Below, piece after piece: positions 22,330 to 57,002 of a DNA stretch of 64,000 nucleotides. A program made the translations under genes and the position numbers. Location: the NCBI RefSeq assembly GCF_001194135.2, contig NC_068991.1:43527018-43591017 (forward strand). Reading direction: 5' to 3'. The notes under the pieces are model-generated. The model saw only the letters and a list, made by a program, of their open reading frames with translations. It was not told where the DNA came from and did not search any database. The stretch's first letter is position 1, and each line of letters opens with the position of its first letter. The stretch is from Octopus bimaculoides. Taxonomy: Eukaryota.

Positions 22330-22746
22330 ATGCTTGAAGACGAAGGACAAAAAACAACGATGGATAAGACCAATAACATATCCAAAAGTTCGAATGATCA
22401 TAGTGTTCCTGTTTCCCCGAAATCTGATCACTCCAATAGTAATGATATTGACAAACAGTGCCAGACAGAAGAGAACACTTTAAGTGTGTCCTCAGACAGT
22501 TCGATCGCGAGTGTTAAAGTAACCCCTCCGAAAAAAACCGGTCGCCAGCTTACAAAAGTGCAAGAAATGGACAGAGAATTAACTGGGTGGATAAATGGTA
22601 TTCATGCCGACGGTAAACTCAACGAGCTGACTCGTGAAATGATCATTGAAAAGGGCCGGCTTATTGCCAAAATGAAAAAGATCTTGGATTTTGCTGGAAC
22701 AACGAATTGGTACACAAGATTTTTAAGGCGGAATTTCTCCGAGACT
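22330..22746 (+). CDS. ARL14EP: Coding exon 1 of HTH(CENP-B/Tc5)-ARL14EP fusion gene
   Basis: ATG at 22330 after an in-frame stop at 22279. EMDRELTGWI...TREMIIEKGRLIAK...FAGTTNWYTRFLRRN fits the HTH_Tnp_Tc5 pattern. Canonical donor ACT|GTAAGT at 22746/22747, phase 0. Confidence 0.8.
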
Positions 22747-25700
22747 GTAAGTATCATCTTTCTAGATTGTTTTTCATATACTTCAGAAGAATCACTTATT
22801 TAAAATTCATTCATCTGCTCCGTTTTATTTATTCTTTTCTTCCATATCTCGATGGCTGTAAGATCGCTTTGTCATGACAATTTTAAAGTTTATTAGAATT
22901 CTTTATATGCTTGTACTTAAATTTAAGACAAAATGTGTTGGCTGTTACATAGGAGTAGAGAAAGAACGAGAAAAACCATAGAAGTTATCATTGAGCTGAG
23001 ATCAAACATTTTCATCAGCCACTTTTGCCAGTTACATGTAAATACACATCTTGTTAACACATTGGACTAAATATCTTTCTAAATGATAATTAAGTTATTG
23101 TTAACATATTTAAATCTAATAAGCTAAAAAATAAATTTAATTAAGAAATACTTAAGCATGGAAGCAAAGGTGATAGCTCAAGTAGGGGAGACAAATCTAG
23201 ACAGGTTTCGCGTTATTACACCTCCTCTGCAAAGCATAAACTTTGCCATATTTTCCACAATAGTGATGAGAACCACTAAACAGACATGAAAAGATTTTTT
23301 TTTTTTACTCAGATATGTCAGAAAGCAATAGTTTGAAGTTGGTGTTAATGTGTTGACACTAACTTCATAAGTTAGTGTTACTGCAGTGAGCATCAAAAGT
23401 CTAATGAGAAATATTTTACTCGTAGTGGGAAGGAAAAGACAACATTAGCTCCATTACTGATACTATTTTAATCATTTCAGTAAGCACAAGACAACTGTTA
23501 GATATTTTTTTTCTGCCCATGTTTACACAAACCAAAATATCAAAGTAATTAACATCAGTTATATTCACATATAGTTCTAAAACTTCTTTATTCTCTATTT
23601 CTAGACATATGTTAAAATAAAAAGATTTTTTCCATTCATTTTAACTATGTAGTAATAATAAATCAGTGATCAAATCTTTATATATTTAGCTATCATATGT
23701 ACCATCTGTTTAACTGACAGTAGATTATATATAGAGACTACAGTAAAATAGGAAACAAATAAAACTACTGTATATATTTTAGTAACACACTCTCAACATA
23801 TGTTCTCTGTTCATGATGATCTCTCAACCATATCTTGACACCTTCAGTGATGTGTCCTTTAAATTCAAATGAACACAGGAAAGAACTTTTTTTTAACCTC
23901 CATTTTTATTTTCCTATTTTTAATAATCCATATTCATTTTTCCATACACAATTTATGTTGGATGGTTTTGCAAAATTTGATGGCATGAGGCATTACACAA
24001 CAAAGAGTAGTAGTGATGAAGTAGGAGGACATATCTAAGAATTTTGAGTACAACTTGAGATGACTGAATAGTGAGACACATTAAAAGATGCATCTTTTAA
24101 TGCATTCTCACACTTGTCTTCAGTTCTTCAGACAGCTTTTTAATGAACTAATTCTGTCTGTGATAAAGGTCAATGAAATATAATGCAAGTCTTTGGCAAT
24201 GGGTTGATAGAATTGTTAGAGCAAAAGGAAAAATGCTTTGTTGTGTTTGTCCCAGCTCTTTGCTCTTAGTACCCAGGTAGATGTGTCAAATTTGTATCCC
24301 ACTGACAAGATAGTGTTTTGTTTTTAAAAAAAATCTGTAGAAAGAGAACTTGAAACTACATTTCTATTTTTACATGAAAACTCCATGACATCAGATAGTG
24401 CTTGTTGTGGAAGTCACTTGATGTTGTTCACAATGTGATGTCATAGAAAAGAAAGGTTGGTCTAACACACCACCCAGTTTAACACAATTACTGGTTTAGA
24501 GTGTTTAACAGCTTAACACTGTCATGGGTTTTGACTCCCATTTTACTCCACATCTATGTTTTTGATGGAACCATTCTGGTTTGATATGTGATCTGGATCC
24601 TATTAGGATAGGTTTAGCAATTCATCTTTTGATGCAGAGCAGCATGTCATTACCTGGATATTACAGTAGGAAAACTCGTAACTATGAGGTTAAAATTATC
24701 AAAAAATTTGTTTAAAGAAATTGTTTTGTTGCTATTAGATTTTCCTGATGCCATGTAAAAACTCTGGTGATGGTGCCATGTAAAAAACACCCTGTATACT
24801 CTGTAAAGTGTTTGACATTAGGAAGGACATCTAGCTGTAGAAATGAAGCCAAAACAAATTATGAAACCTGGTACAGCCCCTGTCCCTGCTAGTTCCTATC
24901 AAGCCATCCTAACCATGCCAGCAAGGAAAACACATGTTAAATGTTGATGATGATATTGGGGTTGATGTAATCAATTATTAGTTTTTACTCTAAATTTGTT
25001 GCTTTCTGTTAATGTGACCAAAACATAATTATTATTTTCATGGACCTCTGAAGTTTGCTAGAGGGAATGTATAACTCCAGTTTTCAGTCTGCTCAGCAGG
25101 TGTGTTTTCTCATGGACATAATGCAATCTCTGCAAGCCAGTAAATAAAAACACTTGTCTATTTATAATAATATTGTTGTTATTTAGCTCTAGATCAGTTT
25201 TGATTCAACAGGCCTATGATCAAAGTCATTCCAACCATGATCGTCCATTGTTTTTGTATTCCTAAAACTAGATGTTTCCATCATTTTGTAAGAGGAAATA
25301 TAGTTGTTATTTGTAACAGGTTGAGTAACCTTTTTGGCTCATTACAATACTGTTGTTTATAGCAGTGAATTATGCCACCTTGTTGTATCCACTTGCTTTA
25401 TTTTTTTATCTAAATTTCTTTCTGCCACTCCTAAATTCTTAACTTTTATAAAAACATCTGCAACATAAGCTAATGAGAGTGTCACTGTTTGGTTACTTGA
25501 CATAGTAGGCAAATCGCCCTCAAATCACCACACTCTGTCATCTTAAGTAAGGAAGGGAGACATTAAATAATCTTGTCCTACACACCACTAAAAAGAGTGG
25601 GTGGCCATGACTAGAATGCTATTGACCATAGGCCTGCTTAATCAAAATTGATTTGAATCTAAACAACAACACCTGCAACAGTTAAGTTTTTGAATAGGAG

Positions 25701-27646
25701 CAACCAGTTGAATCATGGATGTAAATGCATGCCTTTTTTGAGATGCAAGGTATTGTGCATGTAGGAAATGATTTTCAGTGGAAACTTCAAAGAAAAAATA
25801 AATTGCTGTTGAAAGGGGGAAAAAAACCCTTTAAAGAGTTATTTGCTGTTGTGGGTGGTCATATTGATGGCAGAGGCGGGTGAGCATCAATGAAGATGGT
25901 TATGGTGAATGGTGTTTGTAAATAGTTAAGTGTTGGTAGTGGATATGGTTGTTGTTCTTTGGTGATGTTAACACAAAATAGCAATTAGAGCTGCAAGTAG
26001 TTATGTAGGTAATAACCATGAAAATATGATTGTTTGATGTAGCTGGAACTTATTAGAGTGATAATATCTCTGAAGGCTAGAAGCAATAGATATTAAACAT
26101 GTAATCTCTCTCTCTCTCTCTCTCTCTCATATGTGGTGTTAATATAATGGATATGTGGCTAGAGTGCACTAAATGACAGACTGTAATTTGTAAAGATAAT
26201 ATAGATTAAAAAAGAAATTGATTTAAAATAAAGCGCTTTAATAAGTTTAGAGAAAATATATAATTTTCAGTTTTTAAGTAAGATCTTTTTATCAAATAAT
26301 TTATCCTGGAGTTTTCTTAAATGTTTTAATTGGGATTATTTGGTACATCTTTAAGATTAATAATTTTACTATACTGCATTCACCCCATTAATTTCAGCAC
26401 ACTAACTTTAAAAGCAAATATTGCATATGCGTGTATTAGGAACAGCTTCTCATTTAGATATGTGCTATTCAAAACAAACTTGTTTTAGTTTTTATTGCTG
26501 CTTTTTTTTAATAACTGTACTTGTATGACCACTTACTACTTGTATGCATGTATAGGAATTTTTAGTGGTTAAAAGAATGTATATTGATACCAATTTATTG
26601 TTCCTTGTTCCTACATTTATGATTAAGAATGGAGCAGTCATTTCACCTGGGTCATTACCTAAACTATGTTGGATAGTAAAATTGAGAATAAAATTATTTC
26701 TAAATCTTTTAACTTCCTAGAGAAGACATGCAGGACAATTCACATATCTATAAAGGTGGAGGGTGTGTTAGACTTTTCTTCATAAAAGTAATATTGCACA
26801 AAGCAATTAATAGGATTAAATGGATCATTAATGTCTGAAATAGACATTTTAATAATTTAGTAGAGGAATAATATGCAAATAAATTTTAACAACAGACACA
26901 ACATCTATTAAAAATAAAAAAGAATCACACAAAGTAAATATATAGCAGCTAAGCAATTGAATAGCTGAATAGATCATTGAAAAGCCTTTTAAGTTGAACA
27001 GGATACAATATGCATTACACTTAATCATAAAGTAATATCAAAAGCTGGAACATTAGAAATCTCCCATCAACAACAAACAGCAAACCTGTTAATAAACTAT
27101 AAATGGCTTGTCTTCCAGAACAAAAGACAAGTTGCTCAATACAGCAAACCCAGTTGGTAAAATAAAGGCTGTAGGTTCAATCTCTGAAAAACAAGAGAAT
27201 ACCAACTGATACATTCAGTCAGCAATACATCGAAGATGAGAAAAGTAGTTTGAGAAACAAACATTTATAAATCTAATTGTGACAGTAAAACACTATATGA
27301 AAACACAAGCATCTTATTTAAAATATCACTACTACCACTACAAAAAAAGAAAAGAAAAAAAAAACAAAAAGGAATAGAAGTTAGTTATAGAATCAGTATC
27401 TTAATAGCAGTATGTAACTCAAAACGTAACGCTTATATAATACACAATTATAACTGAGACTTTTATACTGGTCAAAAATTCAAAAGCCTGAAGATGGCTA
27501 GTCAGACACATAAAGAGTATTTCCATGGGTCTCCTAAACATGACAAAAAAAATGTAATACCAACTGCCAGTACAGAAGTTCTCATCCAGAAGGTAACACA
27601 GAAGTGTTAAAATGGATCTTTGAACAACAACAACATTATTATTATT

Positions 27647-27708
<62 letters not shown>

Positions 27709-27739
27709 TATTATTATCATTATTATTATACTTCCAGTT

Positions 27740-30700
27740 AGAAGGCTAGAACATTGGTGGAAGCTTGACAGGTATTTTTGTTATCAAAACTACTGTCTTC
27801 ATTGATATTATTGTTTAAAAGGGAGTATAAGACAATAGGCTTTGTCCCCAGAAAAAAAGAACTAAATAACATTTGGGCCTTGTGCCCAGATATTGGTATT
27901 TGCGAAATGTTTACACGTTTGCAAGTGAAAAGTGGCGTGGAGGGGTGTAACTTTCTAATCCAAAACAAACCAGTTTGTGACAGCAGGAAAAGTCATGAAA
28001 ATGTAATTTTCACTGACACTAGTAATAATTTCGAGGACAAAATTGATAACGAATCCAAAAGCACCACAGAATCTATGGACAGCGATAAAATTAACTGCAA
28101 AGAACAAAGAAGTATTACGACAGAGAAAAGCAACACAATGGAGAACACACAATCACTCGATAGTCGAATAGACAACAAAATTGTAACTGCCTACTCCTCC
28201 AACAGAAATAATGTGGAAAATACCATGATAACTGATATCAACACAGAAAATAACAACTCCAACAACATGGAACAGAGAAGCTTAACAAAAAACAATAACA
28301 AAACGAATAACGACAACAAAAACATTGATGAGAACACAACCAATGCCAATTTCAACACCAGCAACAAAGAGGCAGGTGTATTTGGAAGTAACAATAGTAG
28401 TAACAACGTGAACTATTCCACCACCACCATCAACAGGGAGAGCAGAATAAGTACATTTACAGCAGCAGCTGCGAAATGCCAACAAAAGTACTATGAGATA
28501 GACATCTTCAACAAAAAAGCGATGTCAGCCCTGGCCCACAAACTCATAAAAAGAGAAAAAAACCCAGGCAACCCTCGCAATCCCAGCCAAAATGGAGGTA
28601 GAAATTGAGAAGAGGACAGTAAAGTATAGGTGCGTCTCGGCAGAGATGGCACTGAGATCAATCAGAGAGGATGTTGAATTCATTCAAAGAGACTGAAGTT
28701 TTGGTACCGTTTTGGTCCTTTTTAAAACAGAAGAGCTGGCCATGAAGCATTCGGTGGGAGCCTGTAAAAGTAACCAGCTTATAATGTACATGGGCAGAAG
28801 AACAATAAAAGTTTGAGTCCACGGAATAAACACCAGGTATCAACATATGGTGGCTCATGGGATGCGCGATTGCAGAGGGCAGCGACACTCTCCTCCTAGA
28901 AGTCCAACGGATGCAAAAAGAAGACTGGGTTGGGATGGATAAAAACACAAGACTTGGAGAACATCCCAGACCATGTCTGCCTCAAGGACGGGACGAAATT
29001 ACCCTTGATCACTGAGGGCAGAAAGCCTCATTGCTTTGCTTGTGGTGAAGCAATACACCTACAAGCACACTGTCCTCAGCGAAAAGGTACAAGTGTCTGT
29101 AGACTTGCGTTGACACCAATACCAGGGCTGGGAAAACAAAAATACAGCACCAGCTGTAGACCACCAACAACAGGGAAAGCAGCAAAAATAGCAATAATGG
29201 TGGCAGCAGTGGGAGGCATAGCAACAACACCAGCAGGAAAACTGTTGGAGAGGTCAACCACGAAAACCAACTCCTTGCAACCAAGCTCAACAACCCCACC
29301 TCTCACGAACAAACATGCAGAAAAAGATACACATAAAACACAAATTCACTTCCACACAGAGAGGAGGAGGTTGCAACATACACTGGTTCTACCACATTAA
29401 AAAGTGATGATGAGGGGAAACAGAGTAAATCCAAAAAACTGAAAAGAAGTCACAGAGGTGAGACATCTTGTCCTGCACCAAAACAAGATAACAAAGAAAC
29501 TACACATACACCCACAACAAATGCAGACACTCAGACAACTCCCGCAGCACCACAAACACCAAAACTCCCACTGCAGACAGAAAAGAATCCCAAAAGGAAA
29601 CTCACACTACAAATGCAACAAGAACAGCAAAAAGCAATGACGCAGGCAGCTAACTTTATGTTAGTAAGGAGGGCCAACAAAAAACTGATAGCCCTCTTAT
29701 CAGGAAGGAAGTACATTGAAAAAGATGGGGGGAAATCTTGGACTAGCACATGCAATGTGTCAAAGGATTTAATGATGGTGAGGATGGATTTGGACACTTA
29801 CCAAACAATGAGGGATGCCTTTCCAGACAATGTAGGGATCCTTCAAGTAAAGGTCAATGGAAGGCTTCTACAAGGGTTCCCAAAGGAGCCCAATGAAGAA
29901 ATGGAGGTAGGACCACCTGATCTCCAATGGCACCAAGATGGTAAGTAACACTCCTCATCTTTCTTGCCTTCCTTTTAGGCCAATTTGGCTGTGCTAAGAG
30001 TAGGCTGCATAAATGCACATGGCCTGGTGTCGTCCTGGAAGCAAGGTCGCTTGCTCAATGACTTCAGGTGGCTGAATTTGGATATAATAGCCATCAGTGA
30101 GACCAGGATCGCAGACACATGCACCTTAGCATCCATTTTTGACGATTTTGAGATCTTTGCATCTCTTAGTCGACCAGGGATGGGGGTGGGGTGACAGTGA
30201 TGTTCAGAAAAGGTCAGGATTTTGAGATATAGTTGGTCTTCCTGGACCCAGAAGGTTAGTCAGTGGTCCTGGATATGAATGATAATAAAGGCAGTACTTT
30301 TAGACTGGTTGCTATGTATGCTCCAACTGGATCGGGCAGCCGGATTTCTTCAGACATTTGGAGGTCTTTCTAGTGTTATTGGGCGACTAGAACGCCATCT
30401 TGGATGCATGTGTAGATTGGGTGGGGCTAGCAGATAGAAAAGTGGAGTGTGCAAGCCTGCTCAGTCGTTTCCAACTGGCTGACAGGTTGAGACTGGATTA
30501 CCTGAATGCCCCAGTGTGGACATGGGCAACAGCATCAGGTCATCCAGATCTTATCTCGATAGGATATTTTATTGGCCAGCAGATAGGGATAGCATAGGTT
30601 GCCCACAATTCGAACTCATCAGCTATACAGACCACAAGTTTGTGAACTGTACGGTTGACCTAGATAGGCTTCATAAGCAGGCTCCTGGATACTGGAAGCT

Positions 30701-33470
30701 GAATGCATCCTTCCCGGCGCATCGAGCTTTCGGAGAACAACTTAGCAAGTTGACAGGTGCAGTCAACAACCGATGGTGGGTAGCCCCCAAATGAGAGATT
30801 AGAGTAGAAGCTGTAAAATTTAGCAGAGAACTAGTGATACAGAAGACTAGAGTAGAGGGAGACCTAGTTAGGAAATTAGAAGAGGCACTCAGTAGAGGCA
30901 TAGCAACCAACGTGCTGACAGCGAGATTGGTTCTGAACAAATTCTTCCACACCAAGTATGGAGGTTGCATTGTCAGAGCTAGGGCACGTGTTCTAAAACA
31001 GGAGGGAACAAAAGCCGTTTGATGGGCTCGGGTGGCCGAGGCGCAACATGGTAATAAAACTACAATTCGGTCTTTAGGGGAGGGGTCAGGACAGGCACAT
31101 GCTACATGGGTCCAAGCAGATTTGTGTGGAATTTCAGCGGCACTTTGCTGAACTGTACAGGGCACATGGTGGTCTGGAGGTGGTGATGAACCTCACTTCT
31201 TACCTTGATGGTCTGCTGTGGCTTTCAGCCAGGGATGTGGAGTTCTGCCAAATGCTGATAACAGTTGAAGATATATATGACGCGTTGGCTAGTTGCACAA
31301 GGGGGGAAATCTCCAGGATTGGATGGTCTGTCCTTCAAGCTTTATATTCATATGTCAGGCTTGTTCAGTGAGCTTTTGCAGAGTGTTTTCTGCAACTGGC
31401 AGCAGAACAGGAAAATCCCCAGATCTGTGAGCCATGATGTGGTGGCGCTTCTGAGAAAGGATCTGAACAAGGAGTACATTGTTGATAACTGTAGACCTGT
31501 AACTCTGCTAAATGCAGATTACAAAATTTTGGCCAAGGTGTTAGCAAAGAGGTTGGCGCTTGCCGTAGACAGACTGGTGGGTGATGAACAGACTTGCACT
31601 ATCCTCATCCAATCTATCCACGACAATCTCTACTTCATGCGATACATCATAGAGAGGGTTGGTAAAGAACCTGGCATGGGTGGGGCCCTGATCAATTTGG
31701 ATCAATCGAAAGCTTTCAATAGGATTGACCATCAGTATTTGGAGGATGTCCTTAAGGTAGCTGGTTTCGGTCCTGTTTTCAGAGGTTGGATCACTGCAAT
31801 ATACAGCGACATCTGTTCGTTGGTCAAAGTAAATAGCTACCTGTCGGAATCGTTTAGCATCGCACGTTCAGTCCATCGAGGATGCCCACTCTCATCTTTT
31901 CTCTATGTACTGGTATTGAAGCCATTACTACAGAAGCTGAATGTTTTGAGGGGCATCCCAAGTGAACTAAGATGTGGAAGGTTTGTGTCGGCATATGTGG
32001 ACGAAGTCACAATGATAGTGTCGGACGTCTCGGAAATTGAGATGGTTGGCACTACCCTAAGGGAATACGAAGTGGTGACAGGAGCAATGATTATCCAGAA
32101 GTCAGTGGGTCTGCAGCTTGGCCCCTGGAGAGGCAGGTCCTTGCCAACCAACAGCTTTGTGGTGCGCTGGACGGAAGGACTGGTTAAGTTGCTCAGGATC
32201 TGGTTAAGTTGCTCAGGATCTGGTTAAGTTGCTCAGGATCTGGTTCAGTCTGGACCTCCAAGTGGACAAGAACTGGGGTGAGATGACAAACAGGGTGGCT
32301 AGTCTCATCTAGAAATGGGCCGCGAGGAAGCTGTCCTTGAAAGGTCAGGTGGATGTGGCGAATGCGTACATTGCATCCATCATGTACTACCGCCTGACTG
32401 TTGTCTCTTGCCTCACTTCATGGCTGAACAGGCTAGTGTGCTTGCTCTTCTGCTTCCTGTGGAAGGGACAGGTACCGCTTGTCAGACAGTCCATTTGCTG
32501 TCAGTACTCATTGCGTGGAGGACTGGGCATGCCATGGCTGATGATGCACAGACATGCACTGAGGCTGCAACATCTCCGGTAATACCTTAACGGTAAGCAA
32601 GTATGGTTACTGTTTGTTGAATGCGCTTTTCCATAGCTCATCTCCTTGATGTGTCTACAGTTCTGGATCAGGCATAGACCAAGGCAGGGTGCTTGGCACC
32701 TAGAGTGTCTCCAAGTGCTCACAGCCCTTGGCCAGTCAGGCAGTGTGGTCGGTGGAAGTTCCACCTTGAAGTTCTATAGAGGATTAGTGGCAGACAAGAG
32801 TGATGACATTCTCAGAGAGGTTCTGGCGTCGGGAGGGATCAACTGGCTGGTCTCTTCCAAAGCACTTTCGGGCTGGGGCCTGTGGATAACTTTCAGAAAT
32901 CCCTGGCTTGGAAGTGCTACTGGGGGGCTCTGCCAGTTCGCAATAAGCTCTACAGGCACAGGTGTGCAGTCAGACGGGCTTGTCTGAGATGCACGCGGAA
33001 TAATGAAACTGTTCTGCATGCTCTCATACAATGTCCACACATTGCTGCTTGGTGGAGCTTTGTTGAACAGTTATTCTCACGTATAGGATGGATCCAGCTA
33101 TCGTCCAACTCCATTGTGAAGATCACCCTGCCTCCTTCCTTTGGCTGGGAAGGACAAGCAGCTTTTCTCTATTTGGTGGCTATGGCAAAAGTGGTTGTGT
33201 GGTGGACATGATTGAAAGGGTTGAAGATGGTACCTTCCTCTTCGGCAAAGGCCTCATTGACTTTTTCAGGTTCCACCTGAAAAGGAAAGTGAGGCTGGAG
33301 AAGGAGGTGCTGTCACCCAGTAAGTTTGTTGAAAGGTGGGTGAATGTGACAAGAATGGTCCATGTGAATGGGCCTACTCTGTGTGCCTGTAGGCCAGATG
33401 GAATGAGGAAGAGAGGGGTGCCTACCTTAGGTGCCTTTGGTGTTAAGGGGTCGAAAGTGTGTGAAAGTAT
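27740..33470 (+). mobile_element. Tx1/L1-clade non-LTR retrotransposon, near full length but inactivated (intron 1 of the host gene)
   Basis: ORF1 with zinc knuckle CFACGEAIHLQAHC (~29035); APE endonuclease LRVGCINAHG...IAISET (29985); RT KSPGLDG, RPVTLLNADYKILAK, VHRGCPLS, YVDE (31265-32227); zf-RVT CLRC...ETVLHALIQC (~32980). Multiple stops and frameshifts. Confidence 0.92.
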
Positions 33471-36400
33471 TATTATTATTCAAAATGAAACCTAACACTA
33501 ATAAGATATTGTGATAAAACAAATTGAATTTGGATGGTAGCAGTGTTTTCAGACAAGACATACAGTTAAGCATATCCCTTCCTGGATATGTCTTAATATC
33601 ATGAAATTGTCATGTTCATTGCTTTCTTATACAAAGTTTTGAGGGATAAGATACTTAGGTTCTAAACAGAATTCTGATATTTGTATCTTAACTAAAGGTC
33701 CTAGCAATATAAGCAAGATGAAAAATAAAATCAGGAGAGTTAGGAGTTCAAAAGTGGATTATGACTTAGCATGATAGCAGTAACCATTCTACTTTCTAAA
33801 ACTGACTGTGATGCCATTTTGTTTTGGCATATATACATTTCCCAAGGATACTAACATTGTAAATGAAATGAGACACTTTTTTTTATTATATTGCAGACTC
33901 ACTTAACCAAATGTAACTACTGCACTTCAGCAACTGTACCTTATCTGAAAAATTTTAAAACTACACCATTTTAACTGTGTGTCAAGCTAAATTTTCAACA
34001 TGAAGAATGAATGTTACCAGACCATGCTTCCAAGTTCAAAAAGTAAAAATTAATAAATTAGTTCTGTACAGAGGAAGGTGTGACTGTATGGGTAAGAAAT
34101 TCTCTTCCCAACCTGATTTAGGGATTCAGTCCCACTCTTTAGCATTTTGGGTGTCTTCTACTATAGCTCCTGGTTGGCCAAAGCCCCCAAAGCCTTATGA
34201 GTGTATTTGGTAGACAGAAACTGAAAGAGAACTGTCATATATACATATCTATAAAATGTGTGCGTGTCTGTTTACATTTTGCTCACTTCTATGAAAGTTG
34301 TTACATATGTGCAATGTTGTTGTCAGTTCTCTTGTCAGCACATCATCTGCTTGCTTTACTCTTTTGAAGCCATGTGGAATAAAAGATCCCTTGCTTGAAA
34401 AACAGGTAAGGATTAGTAACAGGAAGGACATTTGACTGTAAAGCAGTGCCTCAAAAACAAATTCATCTAACCCATGCATGCATAGACAAATGGATGTAAA
34501 AACGAATGATAAAAATAAATGAACAATTCAAATTAAACAATATTAATCAATGTCCTCTCTCTGTTTTTAGTACTAATGCTACTATAATTCTCTCTATGCA
34601 GCTCTATCTAAATACTGCCTGTGTCCCTAGCTTTCTTCAATCATCCTTACTGTAGCCATAGGGGATGTAATAGTTACTATATGGAGTATTTTCTTCTAGA
34701 GGGATTGATCAGTGAAGTTAACCCAAACAGGATTTGAACTCAAAGGAACAAAGGTAGTTACTGCAAGGTTCAATGCTTTCCCATATCTACTTACCACTCT
34801 TCTATGTAGGTGCAATGTCAACTCCAGTAAATAATGATTTGTTCGTATTTTATGAATATGAATCATTTGACTCGCACTGAATTTGAACTTAAAAGTAGAG
34901 ATGACATCGGCAGAAGAATAATAGCTAAGTTAGTGTGAGCTTTATTTCAGGCTTTCTGAACCTCATCAGTAAAGTGTAAATTTCTCTATACTTGTTAAAG
35001 TAGCGATAAGACAATTACTAAATAGATGTACAATATTATACTTGTATTCATTTGTTTTACATCCCTATTCCATGCTAGCATGGGTTAGACATGTTCAGCA
35101 TCCAACAGTTGGATGCTATTTCTGTTGTTAACCTTTGCCTGTTTTTCAAGTAAAGGATCTCTTATTTCACATATCTTTGAAGGTGTGAAGTGAGTGGGAA
35201 ATTTGTTGTCAGTAGAAGTAACAGCAGCAACACTGCTTGTAGCAAGTATCATTTATAAAGCACAAATATAAACAAACACACACGCACACACATATAATGT
35301 TTCTGTCTACCAAATTCACTCAAGACTTTGGTTTGTCTGGGTACAAAACACTTATCCAAGGTGCTGCACTGTGGGACTGAACATGAAACCATATGGTTGT
35401 GAAGCTAATTTCTAAGCCATACAGCTATGCCAACACTTTGAGAGAAAATTAGCACTTTTATTCAGGAACACCATCAGTATTAAAAATAGTTAAGTTAATG
35501 ATCACTGCTTTGACAAGTTTATGCTTTGCTGAGCAGGTATAATAAGACCAAAGCATGTCTAGGGTTGTCTCCTGTACATAGTAGAATAATATACTATAAG
35601 ATAGTATATAATTATTATTATTGGTGGTGGTGGTAGCATCAATAATGATAACTGTCAAGAATTGCCATGGGGGTAGTAAGCTCCTGGCAAACTATATGAT
35701 GCGAGTCAGCTTTGATTCTTGTCTTAGGTATTGCACCTATTCTACTAATACTTATGAGAAAAGGCACAAACATCACAACTACAATCCTTTCACTCTGTAC
35801 AACAATAGTGCTGATCTTTTATCACAAACACATAAACATCAGGCAGTTAACTTAATGCGGAATAAATATTTTATCTTTTATAGTTGTAGTGGCATAAAAT
35901 CTTGTAGTTTATTTAAATCATTAAACAGTATAAAAATAGGAAGGTAATCGAAGTCGCCTAACAATGCCAAGTTGGAGAAAAATGATCTGTTCAATATTTC
36001 ATTATCATCATTATTTTAATGCCCACTTTTCCATGTTTGGATGGATCAGATAGAATTTGTTGAAGTAAATTTTGTACTACTGGATGCCCTCCTTGTCACC
36101 AACTTTCACTTGTTCCCAAATAAGATATTTTCTCTATGGTTAGACGTGTTATACGAAAGATTAGAAACAAATAAGTTTTTATGATAGTGTTGCTTGTTGA
36201 CAACTATTGTGCAATGTCTAGACAAGGAGATACTAGCACTCCTACACACACACACACACACTGTCTGCTGGATCTACTCACAAAATTTTGGTAAGCTTTT
36301 TGCTAAGACACTTACCAAAGGTGCCATGTTGTAGAACAGAACCTGAATCACATGGTTAAGAAACAAACTTCTTTACCACAAATTTAATATTCTAGCTTCT

Positions 36401-36973
36401 TTTTCTTTAAAAAAACAAAAGACCCTAATCACTAACTAGAAGTTTTTCATTGGGAGCTAAAGTGTTTACAATACTACACATGTCAAAGAGGCACAAAGAT
36501 GAGTAGATAGCAATATTAATACAATAAACTATTAATAAATAGTCAAGATGATGGTGACTGTTAATCAGTGATTAATCTTTTAGGCAAGTCTGTCATATTT
36601 CTGAGCTCTAATGAATATAAGAAATGTGTAAAATGTTGCAGCCTATGTAAAACATGTTGCATTTTTTGCTATCTTTTATAGTTGAGGTAGCATAAGATTT
36701 TGTTTATTTCAATAGAGCATGCTATAAACTCTAAAGTGCTTAGTTGTTTGCCACTGTGTGCCCAAGGTGCCATACAGTGGGGCTGAACGAGCTTCTTATC
36801 CATACTGCCATGACTATTTTTTTTTTACACCAAAATTATATATATATANNNNNNNNNNNNNNNNNNNNNNNNNNNNNNNNNNNNNNNNNNNNNNNNNNNN
36901 NNNNNNNNNNNNNNNNNNNTACACACATACATACAGACGAGAAATTATTGTTATGTTGTATTCTTTTAAATAG

Positions 36974-37095
36974 GATGTTGGCAAGCATTTGAAAATGCTT
37001 TCTCCTATCAATTCTGTCAAATTTATGGAAGATTTTGATCCAGAAAAAAGTAGCAGGGAAATGCGTAAAATGAACCGAAGAATTTATCGAGAGAA
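36974..37095 (+). CDS. ARL14EP: Coding exon 2 of HTH-ARL14EP fusion gene
   Basis: Acceptor TTCTTTTAAATAG| and donor GAGAA|GTACGT. 122 nt, phase 0 in, phase 2 out. DVGKHLKMLSPINSVKFMEDFDPEKSSREMRKMNRR resembles the ARL14EP F.PE...RE.R..R motif. Confidence 0.88.
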
Positions 37096-39059
37096 GTACG
37101 TTTTCTGTATTTTCCATTCTTGAATGTATTTCATTTCTCAATATTGTGGCCTATAATTAAATTTGTTTTTGTGACTTTATTTCTGTAGAATAGACTGACT
37201 ATAATTTAGTGATGTATCTATAACTTTATATATTGGTATTATGTTGTGTTGAAGTTGACCAATGAAAATCTCACATTATCATTCTTGTTTTAAGATTTTA
37301 ATTTAAATATGAGCACTTGGAGGCACACAGTCTTATGTGGGTTGATATTAAAAGGGCTAAACAGTTTTTGTTCAGTTTGAGTTTTAGGAAACATCTTTGT
37401 TGTGGCCTTTGTAGTGTCACTGTAACTTGGTGGGAGTTTAAGAAGGATGCTTTTAGTTTTTTTAACATCCCACAAACTTCTGTTAGCATTTCTTTGTGTT
37501 TATTTTTTTTTATGGTCTGACAGCATATTTTAAAAATAGAGAAAACAAAACACTCTTTAATACAAATAACATCTTTTCCTTTCTATCCATATTCATTACC
37601 AGAAAATGTTGCTGTGTGGTGGGACTTATCCTAGCTTTTATAACATTGAAGAGTTGAGAGACATACCTCTCGTTTTAGGACTCTTGAGGGCTAAGACTCT
37701 TACCAAGTAGGATGTTAATGAAGATTATCTGGTACCCAGGGAGATGTAAACTGAAAAGTGTATTGTCCAAATACATATAAAATCTCAATATTAAATATTA
37801 AGTGTATAAATATCTGAAATAAATTATTGTTAGTAGGTTTCAATTTTTTTCATGTGGTAAGAAGTTTGCTTTTGCACCATATAGTTCTGGGTTCAGTCCC
37901 ACTGCATAGCCCCTTGGGCCAAGTCCCTTCAACTCTAACCCTGGGCCAACCAAAGTCTTGTAAGTGAATTTGATAGACAGAAATAAAAGAAGCTTTTCAT
38001 GTGTGTCCCCCCACGTCATCATTTGACAACCAGTGTTGATTTATTTTTGTCCTTATAGCTTGGTAGTTCTACAAACGAGATTAGAATAAGTTCCAGGTTT
38101 TAAAAACAAAGTATTGGGTCAACTCATTCAAAGTGGAGCCTCCACATGGCCACAGTAGAATGATTGAAACAAGTAAAAGATAGAAGAGATTAACCTTGTA
38201 TTTAGAGATGAAATTTTTTTTATTTTTTACTTATATGATGTTCCATTCAGGGTGATTGCTTGTCATCTTGGGAGTGCAAATTAGTACCAGACTGAATTTG
38301 AAGCAAACCATTTGAAATATGATGAAGATGTGAATATTAAAATTGCTTTCATATCTAAAGATAAGGTTAATATTGTGTGTATAATATAATGTATATACAA
38401 AAGTGAAACAACACTAGCTGTAATATTTTGTTTCAGTGAAACTGCTTAAAGAGATTTATGTGTTAAAAATATAGGGCTTTGTTCAGAATGTTAGTGGATC
38501 ACCAGATTCACTGTTTCAACCTGATTTGATCTCCTCAGTAACAGATACTACAGATGTTCTGAGCCAATCCAAAAATGCTTGTTCTGTTATAGAAATTTAC
38601 AAGCAAAGCATTTACTGATTTGTGCAAAAGCTGGCCAGGCTAGAACTAAATTAATATATGCACTTGAAACAGTTACAGGTTCAAATGTCTGTGTGTATAA
38701 CATTTATAATGTTTATACAAATGTGGAACAGAACTAGCTATATTATTTTATCTTAGAGAATTATTTTAAAATTTATAAACCTATTCTATGAAATAAGTTG
38801 ATATATTCTATCTAATAAGTACGTTGTTCTTTTAAACATTTGAGATATAAATAGATAATTGGTAAGTAGCTTATCTGATATTTTTACCTTCTGAAATCAA
38901 GTATACACTAAAATTCGGTTAAAGAAATCCGAGATTAGGTTGCAAACAATATGATACAGAGTAATAGGATATTACGTATAACCTTTCAGTTATACACCTT
39001 GTCTACTGTGTACTCTTGAAACAGTAATCTTTGCCTATACACACACACACGCACACATA

Positions 39060-39929
39060 CAGGATGCGTTGAATATATTATCTAAATTACGCTAAAATGA
39101 AAATAACTCTGACATCTCATTTTAACATATATTTACCAAAATTACATAAAAATATCTTGAGATACTATAGAGTAAATTTATTCAATAAAATCACCATTGA
39201 CTTCAACCACAGCCTCCAGACGATTTCGGAATCTCCTGCAACTCTTTTGGACAGTCTCCTTGTTTAAGTTGGTGAATACTGCTATAATCCTTGCCTTCAG
39301 TTCATCTTTGGTGTTACAAGGAGTTTTCTTGGTTTTTCTCTCAACTGTGCCCCACACATAATAATCAAAGGAGTTGCTGTCTGGGGAGTTAGGTGGCCAG
39401 ATGTTAAGAGTGGTGTGGTCGCTGGAATTGTCTGACAGCCATGACTGGGTTCTTCTGTTTGTATGGCATAGTGCAGAGTCCTGTTGCCAGACATAGGGTC
39501 TTCCAGCAGCCACCCTCTTGACCCAGGGCAGCACTACCTCCTCCAGGTGCTTGATGTAGGCCTCTGTATTGAGTCTGAGGCTATGTGGGAAGATGAATGA
39601 GGGCATAACGCCACCATCACTAGTGATCACTTCAAACTCCATGATGTTGGCTACATGTTTGATTTTTATCACTCTTGGTACATGTTTTGGGGACACGGCA
39701 AGCCAAAGGTTGTTTTGTGTATTCACCATCTGTTCGTACTGGAGCTTCCAGTGTGAATGCCCAGCAGTACAGCATGTCGTTTACAAATTTCTGGCAGAGT
39801 GAATTGTGTCTGTTTTCTCACAGACAGTGCACAACTGGCCCTACCATACTGTGTAGTTGACAAAATCAAAAACAAGCAATGCATAGAATTAAAAATATAA
39901 AATGGCGACAATTTACCCATCGCACCCTG
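39060..39929 (-). mobile_element. Internally deleted Tc1/mariner DD37D (maT-type) transposon
   Basis: QQDSALCH...WPPNSPDSNSFDYYVW with 37 residues between the two Ds. Degenerate TIRs CAGGATGCG (39060) and CGCACCCTG (39921-39929), TA on both flanks. N-terminal region and first D deleted. Confidence 0.88.
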
Positions 39930-40165
39930 TATTTATGCATATACATAAATACATACATACACACACATATATACTTACATATATTCATATACATATATAT
40001 ATAAAGAGAGAGAGTGCAATACAACAAATATGTTTGAATATATTGTAATTTTATTCATCTCAAGTTTCAATTACCAAAATATATTTCTGTAAAATATTTT
40101 TCTTGAAAGCTAATCAAATTTGATTTGAAATAACTTTTTTATTATTTTTTCATTTTTAATATCAG

Positions 40166-40388
40166 CATGAAAACCAACCAAATGTATGACGAAACTGGTC
40201 GACTTCTTGACAACAGCAAAGATGTTTGTGATTGTTTGGATGAGGACTGTCCAGGATGCCATTTTCCATGTAACAAATGTGGTTCTGAAAAGTGTGGCAC
40301 TGAGTGTCGATGTAATCGGAAGTGGGTATATGAAGTTGTGGAAATTGAAGGCTCAAACCTAGTGATTAGAAATGTTTCTGTAGCATAA
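40166..40388 (+). CDS. ARL14EP: Terminal coding exon encoding the ARF7EP_C cysteine-rich domain
   Basis: Acceptor TTTTAATATCAG|. YDETGRLLDNSKDVCDCLDEDCPGCHFPCNKCGSEKCGTECRCNRKWVYEVVEIEG matches the ARL14EP signature CDCL..DC.GC...C..C.S.KCG.ECRC.RKW. Stop TAA at 40388; AATAAA at about 40524. Confidence 0.95.
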
Positions 40389-51999: not shown

Positions 52000-54900
52000 T
52001 TGCTTTCATCGTAAGGTTAGTTGTTACATTGCTTTGCTGTTATTGCTATAATTGTGTTGGTTGTTTTCCCGTAATTGTAACGTTGTTGAAATTTTTACAT
52101 ATATTGTGAATTGTGATCCTCCCACTTCGGGGGAAGAAATATTGTATGAATTGAATCGAATTGTGTTTTCATTAGTGGGAAACTGAACATTATTTTTCTC
52201 CGTTATACGGAATTGTTTTGTTTAAAAAAAAAAAGAAAATATGGCTTCTATGGAAGTACAAAATAATATGAATTTTGCCGTGGCCGTGAACTGATTAATT
52301 TAAAGATTGAAGAAATTCAAGCCTTTTACGGGATGATCTCCGAAAAGGATGGCGAAGCTAAAATCACACCACCCAGCGAATTGCAGATCAAAATAAAGGA
52401 AAAAACAATAATATATAAAACATATAATGCAGAAACCGAGAGATTTGAACACTTGGAGGGGGGAACTATAGAGAAGTGTCTTGGCACTACAATTAGAAAA
52501 ATTAAATATCTAACAAGAGGGACAAAATTTGCCACAATAGAAGCCTGGTTCGAGTCGACAGAGCGGGCGAAAGAATATTCGGCTCGGACTCTGCAAAGTG
52601 GCAAAATACTATTACTCCCTTTATACCTGGGGAGAAGGACGTCCTGGATAAAAATTAAAAATATCCCCCCCCCCCTCAGGCAGAGGTAGGCTGGATCCTG
52701 GCTACCCTGCTTTGCAAGAGAGAAGACAAAATTAAAATAATCCAGATAACCAGAGATGGACCACAAAATTGGCGGGGTCAGACCCTCGTGATTCTGGCCC
52801 AGGCCACGAGCAACGACCTTGAAGACTTACCAGAAATAATAGTCATGAAAGATATGAACATCCCCATACACGTAGAAGGCAGGAAACCAAGATACTTTAA
52901 GTGTGGTAAGAAAGGCCACATAAAGGAGAACTGCCCAGGAAATAAAAAAGTAAACCAGCCTACCTCTGCCCCCTCCTCCAAGGAAGATGACCCCAAGAGG
53001 GAACATCAGCATTAAAAAAAAAAAACCCAAAGCAAAAGAGGTTGTACCCGCAGCTAGAACCAATACAGAAACCAAAGAAGGTGCACTCCCGGCCACGGAG
53101 GCCGTAGCAAAGAATGCAACCACCAAAGAGGGTGAACTCCCGGCCAAGGAGGCTGTTACCAGGAGTTCACCCCATCAAGAAGTGGCGCCTACAAGAGGGA
53201 CCACCTCGTACGAGTACATTACAGATAGCGAGGAGGAAAAACAGGAACCTACAGACGGTTATAAAGTTTGTTCAAGGAAAAGACCCAAAAAAACCGACTC
53301 CCCGAATAAGGAGCAGGATAGCGTGGGCTCAACAGATAGAAAAGGAAACTCTTGCCTCATCGATCTGCTGAAGCGTTTCAGGCTGGCAGATCGATACAGA
53401 CTTGACCACCCCAGTGTGGACCTGGGCAAGAAGTGACGGAATGGTCAGGTCTTACATAGACAGGATAGTGGTAAGCATTAGAGATAGACACAGTTTCAGT
53501 TGTCCACAATTTACATACGTACCCTACACAGATTAGTGACGTATAGGGTGATTATAGATAAGATACATAGACAGGGATCTGGCTACTGGAAGCTGAACAA
53601 GACTTTATTGAATTGCGAGGTTTACCGTAGCTAGATTAAGGAGTTAGTGAAGAGGGCACTTACCGGCGCTGTTATCAACAACCGGTGGTGGGGTGCCCTC
53701 AAAAAAGCCCTTCGATTTGAGTCAATTACATTTAGCAGTTAAGTCTAGAATAGAAAGGGATTTAGTTAAGGCATTGAGAACGGGCTCTGCATCACAAGTG
53801 TTGGCGGCGAGATCGGCACTGGACCGATACCTCAATGCCAAACATGAAGGATGCAGAGTCCGGGCTAGGACATGTGCAATGGGACGTGAAGGTATCAATA
53901 TTGCTAGATGGGCTCGCTCGGAAGAAACCTGTCGTGGCATCAATGCTACGATCGGGTCTTTGACAGATGAGTCCGGACAAGAGATCCAAGGACAAGAGGA
54001 GAAGTGTAAAGCCTTTCACAAGCACTTTTCCACATTGTTCGGGAGGGATGGGATGTTGGACTATGGGGATGCCTTACGGCATTTTCTGAACGGTAGCCCG
54101 CGTCTTTCGACATGTGACGCTGAGCACTGCGAAGGACCAATCACAGCCAAGGAAATCAGAGAGGTGCTGTCCGAGAGCCCCGGGGACAAGTCGCCGGGTC
54201 TGGATGGTCTTCCCTACGAATTTTACAGTAGCATACCAGACTTGTTCGGGGACATACTGGCCAGTGTGTATACGAATTAGCAGCAGAACAGGAGGATTCC
54301 CAAAGCTGTGAGCTGAGGAGTAGTGACACTGTTCAGGAAAGACCCAAGCAAGGGGAATAACATTAATAACTTTAGGCCCATAACTCTGTTAAACACAGAG
54401 TTAAAGATTTTGGCCAAGGTGTTACCCAAGAGAGTGAGGCTTGCCGTGGGCGATCTGGTGGGAGAGGCACAGACATGTGCCATCCAAGGAAGGACGATAC
54501 ATGACAACCTTCACCTCATTCGCTACACCATAGAGCGGATGGGTAAAGTTCCTGGTAAAGGTGAGGCCAGTCTAAGGCAGTCAATAGGATTGACCATCGG
54601 TATCTGGCGTGGTTGGACTGGGCCCGACTTTTCGTGGCTAGATCGAAGCCTTGTATAGCAACATTGAATCAGTTGTCTGGGTGAACGGGTTCTTCTCGAA
54701 TCCATTCGCGATCGAGTGTTCAGTTCGCCAGGGATGCCCCCTGTCCCCGCTCCTGTATGTATTGACTCTTGAGAGATTGGGGAATGTGGGAGGAGACCCG
54801 CATGATCTATGTTACGGTAGAGGAGCGACGGCATATGTGGATGATGTCACCGTCATCGTGTCTGATGAAGGGCAGCTACCTCATGTAGAAGACTCCATCA

Positions 54901-56389: not shown

Positions 56390-56792
56390 TTGCAAAAGCA
56401 AACGGCTCGTAAATCTACCGGAGGAAAAGTTCCTCGTAAACAACTTTCCACTAGGACAGCCTGGAAGAGTGCCCTAGCAACAGGTGGTGTTAAAAAAACC
56501 TCATCGTTACAGCCAGGTACTGTAGCTCTCCGTGAGATCAGCCATTACCAAAAATCTACAGAACTTCTCATCAGGAAGCTTCCCATCCAGTGTCTTGTAC
56601 GTGAGATCGCTCCGGATTTCAAGACAGATTTTCATTTACTGAGCTCTGCCGTGGGGGCTCTTCAAGAAGCTAGTGAGGCTTATTTAGTCGGTCTTTTTGA
56701 AGATACCAATCTGTGTGCCATCCACACCAAGCAAGTGACCATCATGCCTAAAGATATCCAACTCATCCGCTGTATTCGTGATGAAAGTTTAA
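56390..56792 (+). pseudogene. H3: Histone H3 pseudogene (no ATG, many substitutions, compensating indels)
   Basis: [17 protein letters not shown]...[24 protein letters not shown]. Decayed stem-loop GGCCGTTTTCAGGACC at 56819-56834. Confidence 0.92.
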
Positions 56793-57002
56793 GTGGCAGG
56801 AGTTTCTGCTTCTACAATGGCCGTTTTCAGGACCCCAGTATTTTCGCTGGAAATATCTTCTACCTGTTATTGATGTAACGATAAAGTTTTTATTTTTAAG
56901 TCGAGGGTCACCAATTGTAACGATGATAATTTGTGTAGTTACCAATTGTAATGAGTAAGATTGATTAGGTACACAATAATATGAAATGTCAGAGTTAGCA
57001 GT

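What the first reader, a model, noticed from the sequence alone, without database searches (positions are those of the whole stretch)
22330..40388. Apparent host-transposase fusion: CENP-B/pogo-type HTH spliced to the ARL14EP SETDB1-cofactor domain
Seen in sequence: three exons with canonical splice sites and matching phases (0, then 2) give a 253-aa ORF: ...ELTGWI...EMIIEKGRLIAK...WYTRFLRRNFSET|DVGK...FDPEKSSREMRK...N|MKTNQMYDETG...CDCLDEDCPGC...KCGTECRCNRKW. Exon 1 carries an isolated HTH_Tnp_Tc5/CENP-B-like domain with no DDE domain and a clean GTAAGT donor right after it, the pattern expected of exon capture. Established: vertebrate ARL14EP (C11orf46) and C. elegans ARLE-14 associate with the H3K9 methyltransferase SETDB1/MET-2, and I do not recall those proteins having a CENP-B HTH. 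Inference: this lineage may have a transposon-derived DNA-binding adaptor that targets SETDB1/H3K9me3 to pogo/Tigger-type TIRs or derived sites, analogous to KRAB-transposase fusions but with a different effector.
Basis: partly seen in the sequence, partly recalled or inferred. Interest (0 to 1): 0.9.

Follow-up and report, generated by a model that had tools for sequence, protein, structure and literature searches.

The report
Octopus SETDB1 cofactor carrying CENP-B-type HTH
This is the annotated Octopus bimaculoides ARL14EP gene, and in cephalopods this partner of the silencing enzyme SETDB1 carries a conserved, selected DNA-binding-type domain of transposon ancestry in its first coding exon, an arrangement that databases flag automatically but that no paper I could find discusses.

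Summary
Exons 22330-22746, 36974-37095 and 40166-40388 join in frame to 253 aa. That protein is 100% identical to RefSeq XP_014786963.1 (ARL14 effector protein isoform X1, Octopus bimaculoides). UniProt auto-names the same protein "HTH CENPB-type domain-containing protein".

The N gap is a microsatellite inside intron 1 and does not affect the coding sequence.

The C-terminal half is a clear ARF7EP_C domain (E 5e-34). It matches the solved human ARL14EP cysteine-rich domain, which binds SETDB1.

The HTH is below Pfam's cut-off (18.6 against 22.2 bits), but three other tests support it:
- A profile of it retrieves true PF03221 proteins.
- Its AlphaFold model matches the CENP-B DNA-binding domain best (rmsd 1.0 Å).
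- dN/dS is 0.03.

The same exon structure occurs in O. vulgaris, O. sinensis, Argonauta and a second octopus paralog. Spliced mRNA contigs join the two domains in a relative of that second paralog.

Among about 90 ARF7EP_C proteins scanned, only the cephalopod ones carry the HTH. Oyster and scallop isoforms carry a THAP domain at the same phase-0 junction.

Direct capture from a transposon, DNA binding and SETDB1 targeting remain inferences. The nearest HTH relatives are mollusc multi-HTH proteins with no transposase catalytic domain.

The parts
22330..22542 (+). Exon 1, first part: start codon and a 71-aa Ser/Asn/Asp-rich tail, predicted disordered
   Evidence: The ORF starts at the first ATG after an in-frame stop. 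AF2 pLDDT is 25-35 over aa 1-72. The tail is poorly conserved between paralogs. Against O. vulgaris it has 5 nonsynonymous and 3 synonymous changes, dN/dS about 0.4.
22543..22746 (+). Exon 1, second part: basic arm plus a single CENP-B/Tc5-type helix-turn-helix (aa 72-139), ending at a phase-0 GTAAGT donor
   Evidence: Pfam PF03221 scores 18.6-19.6 bits over aa 79-135. A profile search retrieves PF03221 proteins. The AF2 model has pLDDT 82 and its top Foldseek hit is 1hlv_A, rmsd 1.0 Å. hhalign to CENP-B residues 78-130 gives E 5e-5. dN/dS is 0.03 against Argonauta.
22747..36973 (+). Intron 1 (14.2 kb), holding a LINE-type retroelement remnant (about 28930-33495) and the assembly gap 36849-36919
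   Evidence: RVT_1 E 3.6e-18 at 31265-32227 and zf-RVT E 3.7e-7 at 32882-33211. The gap is a microsatellite with collinear flanks.
36974..37095 (+). Exon 2 (122 nt): N-terminal part of ARF7EP_C (DVGKHLKML...FMEDFDPEKSSREMRKMNRRIYRE)
   Evidence: Pfam ARF7EP_C covers aa 143-240. A homologous 122-nt exon with the same phases is present in scallop, and the boundary lies within two codons in oyster, where intron 2 is short.
37096..40165 (+). Intron 2 (3.07 kb) with a Tc1/mariner-like DDE fragment on the minus strand at 39178-39729
   Evidence: Weak DDE_3 hit, E 0.0037; ORF listing.
40166..40388 (+). Exon 3: C-terminal part of ARF7EP_C and the stop codon
   Evidence: Matches PDB 8hfp_A 'ARL14 effector protein' at E 1e-23.
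40227..40313 (+). Cysteine-rich domain (aa 201-229, CDCLDEDCPGCHFPCNKCGSEKCGTECRC), equivalent to the human C11orf46 CRD 209-237
   Evidence: All Cys residues, G210 (human G218) and R228 (human R236) are invariant across 67 family members. The human CRD and R236 are needed for SETDB1 binding (PMC6739341).

Best explanation
The window carries the Octopus bimaculoides gene for ARL14EP paralog A (RefSeq XP_014786963.1).

Its two 3' coding exons encode the ancient ARF7EP_C module. The cysteine-rich part of this module is the surface that, in human C11orf46/ARL14EP, binds the non-canonical MBD of SETDB1.

Its 5' coding exon encodes a disordered tail, a basic arm and one CENP-B/Tc5-type helix-turn-helix, which is the second HTH of a pogo-type DNA-binding domain. 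It has no first HTH and no DDE catalytic domain.

This exon was joined to the ARF7EP_C module at a pre-existing phase-0 intron. That happened before the two octopus paralogs arose and before octopods split from Argonauta and from a more distant relative. It has been kept under strong purifying selection since.

Shown here: the gene model, both domains, the conserved exon structure, the selection, the restriction to cephalopods, and a parallel THAP-ARF7EP_C arrangement in bivalves.

Inferred: the protein is a nuclear adaptor whose HTH and basic arm contact DNA while its CRD holds SETDB1. This would give the SETDB1 complex a direct DNA anchor and favour H3K9 methylation at bound sites. Whether binding is sequence-specific, or aimed at transposon ends, is unknown.
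For: - Identity to the RefSeq protein, and UniProt's 'HTH CENPB-type' name.
- Exon structure conserved in four other loci, including the paralog.
- Spliced mRNA contigs from 118 sequencing-run blocks carry HTH and ARF7EP_C in one ORF for P0003. Unspliced variants break at the same exon 1 boundary.
- ARF7EP_C E 5e-34. Match to solved ARL14EP 8hfp at E 1e-23, with all Cys and the human G218 and R236 equivalents conserved.
- An HTH profile search of 1.84 billion representatives gave 13 hits. Nine of the 10 non-cephalopod hits I scanned are above-threshold PF03221 proteins.
- AF2 domain model with pLDDT 82. Foldseek's only confident hit is CENP-B bound to DNA (prob 0.99, rmsd 1.0 Å, 57 columns). 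hhalign gives E 5e-5.
- dN/dS is 0.03 for the HTH and 0.04 for ARF7EP_C against Argonauta, with dS above 1.
- The HTH was found in 4 of 67 ARF7EP_C proteins, all cephalopod. THAP was found in 3, at the same junction in scallop and within two codons of it in oyster.
- Literature: the CRD binds SETDB1 (PMC6739341); the CRD binds the SETDB1 MBD (Structure 2024 32:304, as cited in PMC13108219); ARLE-14 promotes MET-2 association with chromatin (PMC6105299).
Against: - The Pfam HTH score for this protein is below the curated cut-off. A sequence-profile search of PDB did not find CENP-B. The Foldseek E-value is only 0.75 because the domain is short.
- Only one of the two HTH modules that CENP-B uses to read its box is present.
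- No DNA-binding or SETDB1-binding data exist for any cephalopod protein.
- I could not obtain junction-spanning transcripts for this paralog itself. The support is the RefSeq model plus conservation.
- The name 'isoform X1' implies other isoforms exist, and some may lack the HTH, as the short bivalve isoforms lack THAP.
Confidence: 0.6

Rival explanations
1. The architecture is real, but the HTH exon was not captured directly from a mobile pogo/Tigger element. It was shuffled from a host gene that already carried domesticated CENP-B-type HTH repeats. Such genes are greatly expanded in molluscs.
For: The best non-cephalopod matches of the HTH profile are DDE-less proteins with tandem BrkDBD/CENP-B_N and HTH_Tnp_Tc5 units from Magallana gigas, Lottia and Saccostrea. 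None of the 10 hits I scanned with Pfam has a DDE domain. A published survey reports expansion of CENPB-type factors in molluscs, including Octopus (PMC10027918). The HTH lies in the 5' start-codon exon. As I recall, vertebrate transposase captures usually have the transposase in 3' exons.
Against: The HTH starts at about residue 72, the position HTH2 occupies in CENP-B (residues 78-130). That would fit an exon that began as a transposase N-terminus whose first HTH has decayed, although the tail length varies from 63 to 135 aa among relatives. With hits this distant (single-stretch E-values of 1e-5 to 1e-11), no donor can be named either way.
Confidence: 0.4
2. The HTH is conserved but does not read a DNA sequence. 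It serves as a non-specific DNA or chromatin anchor, or as a protein-protein interface. It would replace whatever the variable N-termini of other ARL14EP proteins do, such as the histone H3 binding of the non-CRD part of human C11orf46.
For: Only one HTH is present. N-termini of ARF7EP_C proteins vary greatly across phyla. Human C11orf46 binds H3 independently of its CRD. ARLE-14 affects the amount of MET-2 on chromatin but not its location.
Against: The predicted recognition helix (GT(T/A)NW(Y/F)TRFL.RNF) and the preceding basic arm (K/R..RQLT) are nearly invariant across paralogs whose synonymous sites are saturated. Bivalves independently place a THAP domain, a sequence-specific DNA binder, at the same position.
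Confidence: 0.3
3. The fusion is an annotation or assembly artefact. Exon 1 would belong to a separate HTH gene, and exon 2 would be spliced from another upstream exon, perhaps one hidden in the gap.
For: I could not retrieve junction-spanning reads for this paralog. Intron 1 is 14 kb long and holds a gap.
Against: The gap is a microsatellite that is only about 19 nt long between the same flanks in two gap-free assemblies. The exon order, junctions and phases are identical in four other loci. mRNA contigs join the domains in the sister paralog lineage. Purifying selection is equally strong on both parts.
Confidence: 0.03

Closest known systems
Human ARL14EP/C11orf46 and C. elegans ARLE-14 (SETDB1/MET-2 cofactors)
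   Same: Same ARF7EP_C domain. The cysteine-rich segment matches the solved human domain at E 1e-23, with all Cys and the disease residues G218 and R236 conserved. The two-exon structure of the module is shared with other molluscs.
   Different: The N-terminus differs. The cephalopod proteins carry a CENP-B-type HTH there.
CENP-B and other pogo-derived proteins (PF03221, PROSITE HTH CENPB-type)
   Same: The HTH has the fold and sequence pattern of CENP-B DNA-binding domain 2. UniProt gives the protein that label.
   Different: There is no first HTH (CENP-B_N/psq type), no DDE-derived domain and no dimerisation domain. The Pfam score is below the cut-off.
Host-transposase fusion genes of vertebrates (Cosby et al., bioRxiv 10.1101/2020.05.07.082677), such as KRAB-transposase fusions, and SETMAR
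   Same: A DNA-binding domain of transposase ancestry is joined by splicing to a host chromatin-repression module, and the fusion is conserved under purifying selection.
   Different: The partner is a direct SETDB1-binding domain, not KRAB or SET. The DNA-binding domain is in the first coding exon, at the N-terminus. No donor transposon is identifiable. The lineage is cephalopods.
THAP-ARF7EP_C isoforms of oysters and scallops (XP_022332714, XP_021360546)
   Same: The same ARF7EP_C exons are preceded, at the same phase-0 junction (within two codons in oyster), by an exon encoding a DNA-binding domain of transposon ancestry.
   Different: The domain is THAP (a zinc finger), not an HTH. It is present in some isoforms only. 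No THAP trace is found in the octopus loci and no HTH trace in the bivalve loci.

Membership tests
ARL14EP / ARF7EP_C (PF14949) | Pfam model above its curated cut-off | tested here: met
   117.4 bits against a cut-off of 27, E 5.3e-34, aa 143-240.
ARL14EP / ARF7EP_C (PF14949) | Cysteine-rich domain with the conserved Cys pattern and the residues needed for SETDB1 binding in human (G218, R236) | tested here: met
   CDCLDEDCPGCHFPCNKCGSEKCGTECRC. G210 and R228 are invariant in 67 members. Aligned to 8hfp_A at E 1e-23.
ARL14EP / ARF7EP_C (PF14949) | Physical binding to the SETDB1 MBD | not testable with these tools
   Known for the human protein only (PMC6739341; Structure 2024 32:304, via PMC13108219).
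HTH_Tnp_Tc5 / HTH CENPB-type (PF03221) | Pfam model above its curated cut-off | tested here: not met
   18.6 bits for the full protein and 19.6 for exon 1 alone, against 22.2. The best E among the four cephalopod members is 1.1e-5.
HTH_Tnp_Tc5 / HTH CENPB-type (PF03221) | Reciprocal homology: a profile of the domain retrieves accepted family members | tested here: met
   13 hits at E up to 1e-3 among 1.84 billion representatives. Nine of the 10 non-cephalopod hits scanned have PF03221 well above threshold. hhalign to CENP-B 78-130 gives E 5e-5.
HTH_Tnp_Tc5 / HTH CENPB-type (PF03221) | Three-helix fold of CENP-B DNA-binding domain 2 | tested here: met
   AF2 pLDDT 82.3. Foldseek's top hit is 1hlv_A, prob 0.99, rmsd 1.0 Å over 57 columns, with the next hit at prob 0.14. 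The Foldseek E-value itself is 0.75.
HTH_Tnp_Tc5 / HTH CENPB-type (PF03221) | DNA binding | not testable with these tools
   No experimental data. My hand count of the domain sequence gives about 15 basic and 9 acidic residues.
Host-transposase fusion gene | A transposase-family domain and a host domain in one spliced, conserved ORF under purifying selection | tested here: met
Host-transposase fusion gene | The domain can be traced to a transposon family (nested among DDE-bearing transposases, or flanking element remnants) | tested here: inconclusive
   The closest relatives are DDE-less multi-HTH host-like proteins. No HTH-like sequence occurs elsewhere in the window. No cephalopod transposon library was available.

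The most novel reading that the evidence does not exclude
Cephalopod ARL14EP proteins, and convergently the THAP-bearing isoforms in bivalves, are sequence-specific DNA-binding adaptors. They would recruit SETDB1 directly through the CRD-MBD contact. This would be a molluscan counterpart of KRAB-zinc-finger/KAP1 targeting in which the DNA reader is fused straight onto the SETDB1 cofactor. Possible targets are pogo-type transposon ends or sites derived from them.
Probability: 0.25. Interest if true: 0.8.

Novelty: new variant of a known kind. Interest (0 to 1): 0.55.

Why it matters
SETDB1 has no sequence-specific DNA reader of its own, and its MBD has lost DNA binding and instead holds ARL14EP. 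How SETDB1 is aimed at targets outside vertebrates, which use KRAB-ZFP/KAP1, is largely open. A SETDB1 cofactor that has acquired DNA-binding domains of transposon ancestry twice, at the same exon junction (HTH in cephalopods, THAP in bivalves), offers a concrete and testable route for targeting H3K9 methylation in molluscs. It would also extend host-transposase fusion genes to invertebrates and to a new effector. The finding is tempered because the gene and both domains are already in public annotation and every functional step is still an inference.

Tried and rejected
- A profile search of the word-indexed protein database with the HTH alignment returned nothing, not even the cephalopod proteins themselves. 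I treated this as a tool limitation and used the exhaustive search instead.
- A sequence-profile search of PDB with the HTH found no CENP-B.
- The full-length AF2 model was poor (pLDDT 46) and its Foldseek matches were meaningless.
- The spliced window protein could not be submitted to structure prediction or to the contig look-up. I used the 98%-identical O. vulgaris ortholog and the window's exon 1 domain instead.
- I could not identify the species behind the P0003 mRNA contigs. Its run accessions appear in no paper in the library. It is a relative whose synonymous sites are saturated against Octopus.
- I looked for THAP remnants in the octopus loci and HTH remnants in the bivalve loci and found none.
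- I looked for the bivalve neighbour gene (Ank/SOCS-box) in the octopus loci and found none.
- I tested whether the human and Lingula N-termini are related and found no significant similarity.
- Literature searches for ARL14EP together with HTH, THAP, transposase or host-transposase fusion found no description. The supplements of the metazoan survey of transposon-derived transcription factors list neither accession.


Full report

Yes. The three stretches have the stated boundaries:
- Exon 1 is 22330-22746, ending ...GAGACT|gtaagt.
- Exon 2 is 36974-37095, running from ...aaatag|GATGTT to ...GAGAA|gtacgt.
- Exon 3 is 40166-40388, starting ...atatcag|CATGAA, with the TAA stop at 40386-40388.

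Their lengths are 417, 122 and 223 nt, and the phases are 0 and then 2. Joined, they read as one 253-aa ORF.

The joined protein is 100% identical to P0108. This is RefSeq XP_014786963.1, "ARL14 effector protein isoform X1 [Octopus bimaculoides]", and also UniProt A0A0L8FTT9.

**2. The assembly gap**

The gap at 36849-36919 is in intron 1, 54 nt before the exon 2 acceptor. In the gap-free assemblies of O. vulgaris and O. sinensis, the two flanks are collinear with the window at about 92% identity. They are separated by only about 19 nt of (TA)n/(TACA)n repeat. The gap is an unresolved microsatellite, and nothing coding depends on it.

**3. Is the splice structure believable?**

The same three coding exons, with junctions at homologous codons and the same phases, occur in four other loci:
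- O. vulgaris (L007)
- O. sinensis (L008)
- Argonauta hians (L010)
- a second paralog on another O. sinensis chromosome (P0004, L009)

A protein of the second-paralog type, P0003 (297 aa), is encoded as one uninterrupted ORF on contigs of 1.8-2.0 kb. These come from 118 blocks of public sequencing runs. Contigs that short can only carry the whole ORF if they are spliced mRNA.

Shorter members of the same cluster read from exon 1 into intron sequence exactly after ...NFSDS. This puts intron 1 at the same position in that species.

I could not retrieve junction-spanning transcripts for the window's own paralog. For it, the evidence is the RefSeq model plus conservation.

**4. The C-terminal module**

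Pfam ARF7EP_C scores 117 bits (E 5.3e-34) over aa 143-240, spanning exons 2 and 3. Residues 184-246 match the solved "ARL14 effector protein" chain 8hfp_A at E 1e-23, with every cysteine aligned.

The paper on human C11orf46 places the cysteine-rich domain at residues 209-237. It shows that deleting this domain weakens SETDB1 binding and that R236H abolishes it (PMC6739341). The window's C201-C229 is the same 29-residue segment. The equivalents of human G218 and R236 are G210 and R228, and both are invariant in an alignment of 67 family members. It reproduces the paper's coordinates, and its C-terminal part agrees closely with the 8hfp chain.

A 2026 review cites structural work showing that this domain binds the non-canonical MBD of SETDB1 and SETDB2 (PMC13108219).

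**5. The N-terminal module**

Pfam HTH_Tnp_Tc5 reaches only 18.6 bits on the full protein and 19.6 on exon 1 alone, against a cut-off of 22.2. On that test alone, membership fails. Four other lines support it.

- **Profile search.** I built a profile from only the four cephalopod HTH segments and searched 1.84 billion representative proteins exhaustively. It gave 13 hits at E up to 1e-3. I scanned 10 of the 11 non-cephalopod hits with Pfam, and nine carry PF03221 far above threshold. The named ones are "HTH CENPB-type domain-containing" proteins of Magallana gigas, Lottia gigantea and a snake, plus proteins from Saccostrea and a fish.
- **Predicted fold.** AlphaFold on the 81-residue segment gives pLDDT 82 and pTM 0.69. 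Foldseek against PDB puts 1hlv_A, CENP-B(1-129) bound to its DNA box, first. That hit has probability 0.99, rmsd 1.0 Å over 57 columns and 28% identity. The next hit has probability 0.14. The Foldseek E-value is only 0.75, as expected for so short a domain.
- **Profile-profile alignment.** hhalign places the segment on CENP-B residues 78-130, the second HTH, at E 5e-5. I confirmed the CENP-B fragment I used against 1hlv_A.
- **Database label.** UniProt's automatic naming already calls both O. bimaculoides paralogs "HTH CENPB-type domain-containing protein".

There is no first HTH and no DDE domain. Residues 1-71 are low-complexity and poorly conserved, and AlphaFold predicts them as disordered.

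**6. Selection**

From RQLT onward, all five sequences align without indels. Against Argonauta, the 68 HTH codons give dN/dS 0.03 at dS 1.6, and the 114 ARF7EP_C codons give 0.04.

Between the paralogs, synonymous sites are saturated. dN is still only 0.12-0.19 in the HTH.

Against O. vulgaris, the HTH has no amino-acid change. The 71-codon tail has five. The HTH is therefore as constrained as the SETDB1-binding module, and the constraint is specific to the domain.

**7. Distribution**

Pfam scans of 67 ARF7EP_C proteins from the first search found the HTH in four, all cephalopod, and THAP in three. Nine further long members and the human sequence showed ARF7EP_C only.

A second database search seeded with P0003 added no further HTH-bearing cluster. 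Squid, cuttlefish and Nautilus proteomes may simply be missing from the database.

P0003 comes from an unidentified species whose synonymous sites are saturated against Octopus. The fusion therefore predates the split of the two paralogs and the divergence from Argonauta and from that lineage.

**8. A parallel case**

In the scallop Mizuhopecten, the THAP exon ends ...LGYE|gtaatt in phase 0. It is followed by a 122-nt exon that starts TVTKQLRML and ends ...AGAGAA|gtaa. This is the same exon as the window's 36974-37095.

In the oyster Crassostrea virginica, the THAP exons join at ...TQDE|SKHLRML, within two codons of the same point. The short oyster isoforms of 152-154 aa are too short to include the roughly 165-aa THAP-bearing N-terminus of isoform X1.

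The two-exon ARF7EP_C module is therefore old, and the 5' exon is a swappable unit. Two mollusc lineages have independently placed DNA-binding domains of transposon ancestry there. The octopus loci hold no THAP remnant and the bivalve loci hold no HTH.

**9. Origin**

The nearest relatives of the HTH are DDE-less proteins with tandem pogo-type DNA-binding units. One example is a 2283-aa oyster protein with eight HTH_Tnp_Tc5 units and nine BrkDBD units. A published survey reports expansions of CENPB-type factors in molluscs, including Octopus (PMC10027918). That survey does not list this gene.

The exon could equally have been shuffled from such a host gene. The HTH also sits in the start-codon exon and splices forward. 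As I recall, this is the reverse of the usual vertebrate pattern, in which host 5' exons splice into a transposase.

**10. Mechanism**

The shown parts are the two domains, their junction and their constraint. The rest follows from knowledge of the two families.

The CRD should hold SETDB1 through its MBD. The HTH, with its conserved basic arm (K/R..RQLT) and nearly invariant third helix (NW(Y/F)TRFL.RNF), should contact DNA. This would give the SETDB1 complex a DNA anchor.

ARLE-14 in C. elegans raises the amount of MET-2 on chromatin without setting its location (PMC6105299). A role as a non-specific anchor is therefore a serious rival to sequence-specific targeting. TIR targeting is speculation.

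**11. Novelty**

The gene, the model and both domain labels are already in public databases. I found no paper that notes or interprets an ARL14EP fused to an HTH or a THAP domain.

I rate it a new variant of a known kind: a host gene fused to a DNA-binding domain of transposase ancestry, here with a new effector partner and in a new lineage. Interest is moderate. It would be higher if DNA binding and SETDB1 recruitment were demonstrated.

Noticed in passing
L011 2297-8870 (Mizuhopecten) and L013 1001-9286 (Crassostrea virginica): Bivalve ARL14EP genes have isoforms in which THAP-domain exons are spliced to the ARF7EP_C exons at the same phase-0 boundary (within two codons in oyster). The oyster isoform X1 has a second, weaker THAP-like stretch. 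Short oyster isoforms of 152-154 aa are too short to carry the THAP N-terminus.
   Followed up: partly
P0069 (Magallana gigas, 2283 aa), P0072 (Lottia), P0074 (Saccostrea), P0070/P0071/P0077 (unnamed): Large mollusc proteins are built from up to eight or nine tandem pogo-type DNA-binding units (BrkDBD/CENP-B_N plus HTH_Tnp_Tc5) with no DDE domain. They are the closest relatives of the octopus HTH.
   Followed up: partly
window 28930-33495 (+): A LINE-type retroelement remnant lies inside intron 1. It has a reverse transcriptase ORF (RVT_1, E 3.6e-18) at 31265-32227 and a zf-RVT hit at 32882-33211, and the reading frame is broken into several ORFs.
   Followed up: partly
window 39178-39729 (-): A 183-aa ORF in intron 2 has a weak DDE_3 hit (E 0.0037) and Tc1/mariner-like C-terminal motifs. 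It is probably a decayed mariner-type transposase fragment. It is unrelated to the HTH exon.
   Followed up: partly
window 56390-56878 (+): An ORF with a strong core-histone hit (E 2.6e-35) resembles histone H3 but carries many substitutions and a divergent tail. It is probably an H3 retrocopy or pseudogene.
   Followed up: no
window 52987-54280 (+) and 58201-59591 (+): Further retroelement-like ORFs lie downstream of the gene. The segment NIEKAWKRYLDDCFIIWTKSQ... appears on both sides of the gap at 58691-59033, which suggests a duplicated or mis-joined repeat at that gap.
   Followed up: no
L011 1-579 (-) and L013 5254-6321 (-): An Ank_2/SOCS-box gene neighbours the ARL14EP gene in scallop and lies inside its intron in oyster, which is conserved linkage. 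No counterpart was found in the octopus loci fetched.
   Followed up: yes
P0058 / P0125 / P0126 (Octopus spp., 259 aa): A third octopus ARF7EP_C family member keeps only the cysteine-rich half of the domain behind a long low-complexity N-terminus. It has no HTH.
   Followed up: no
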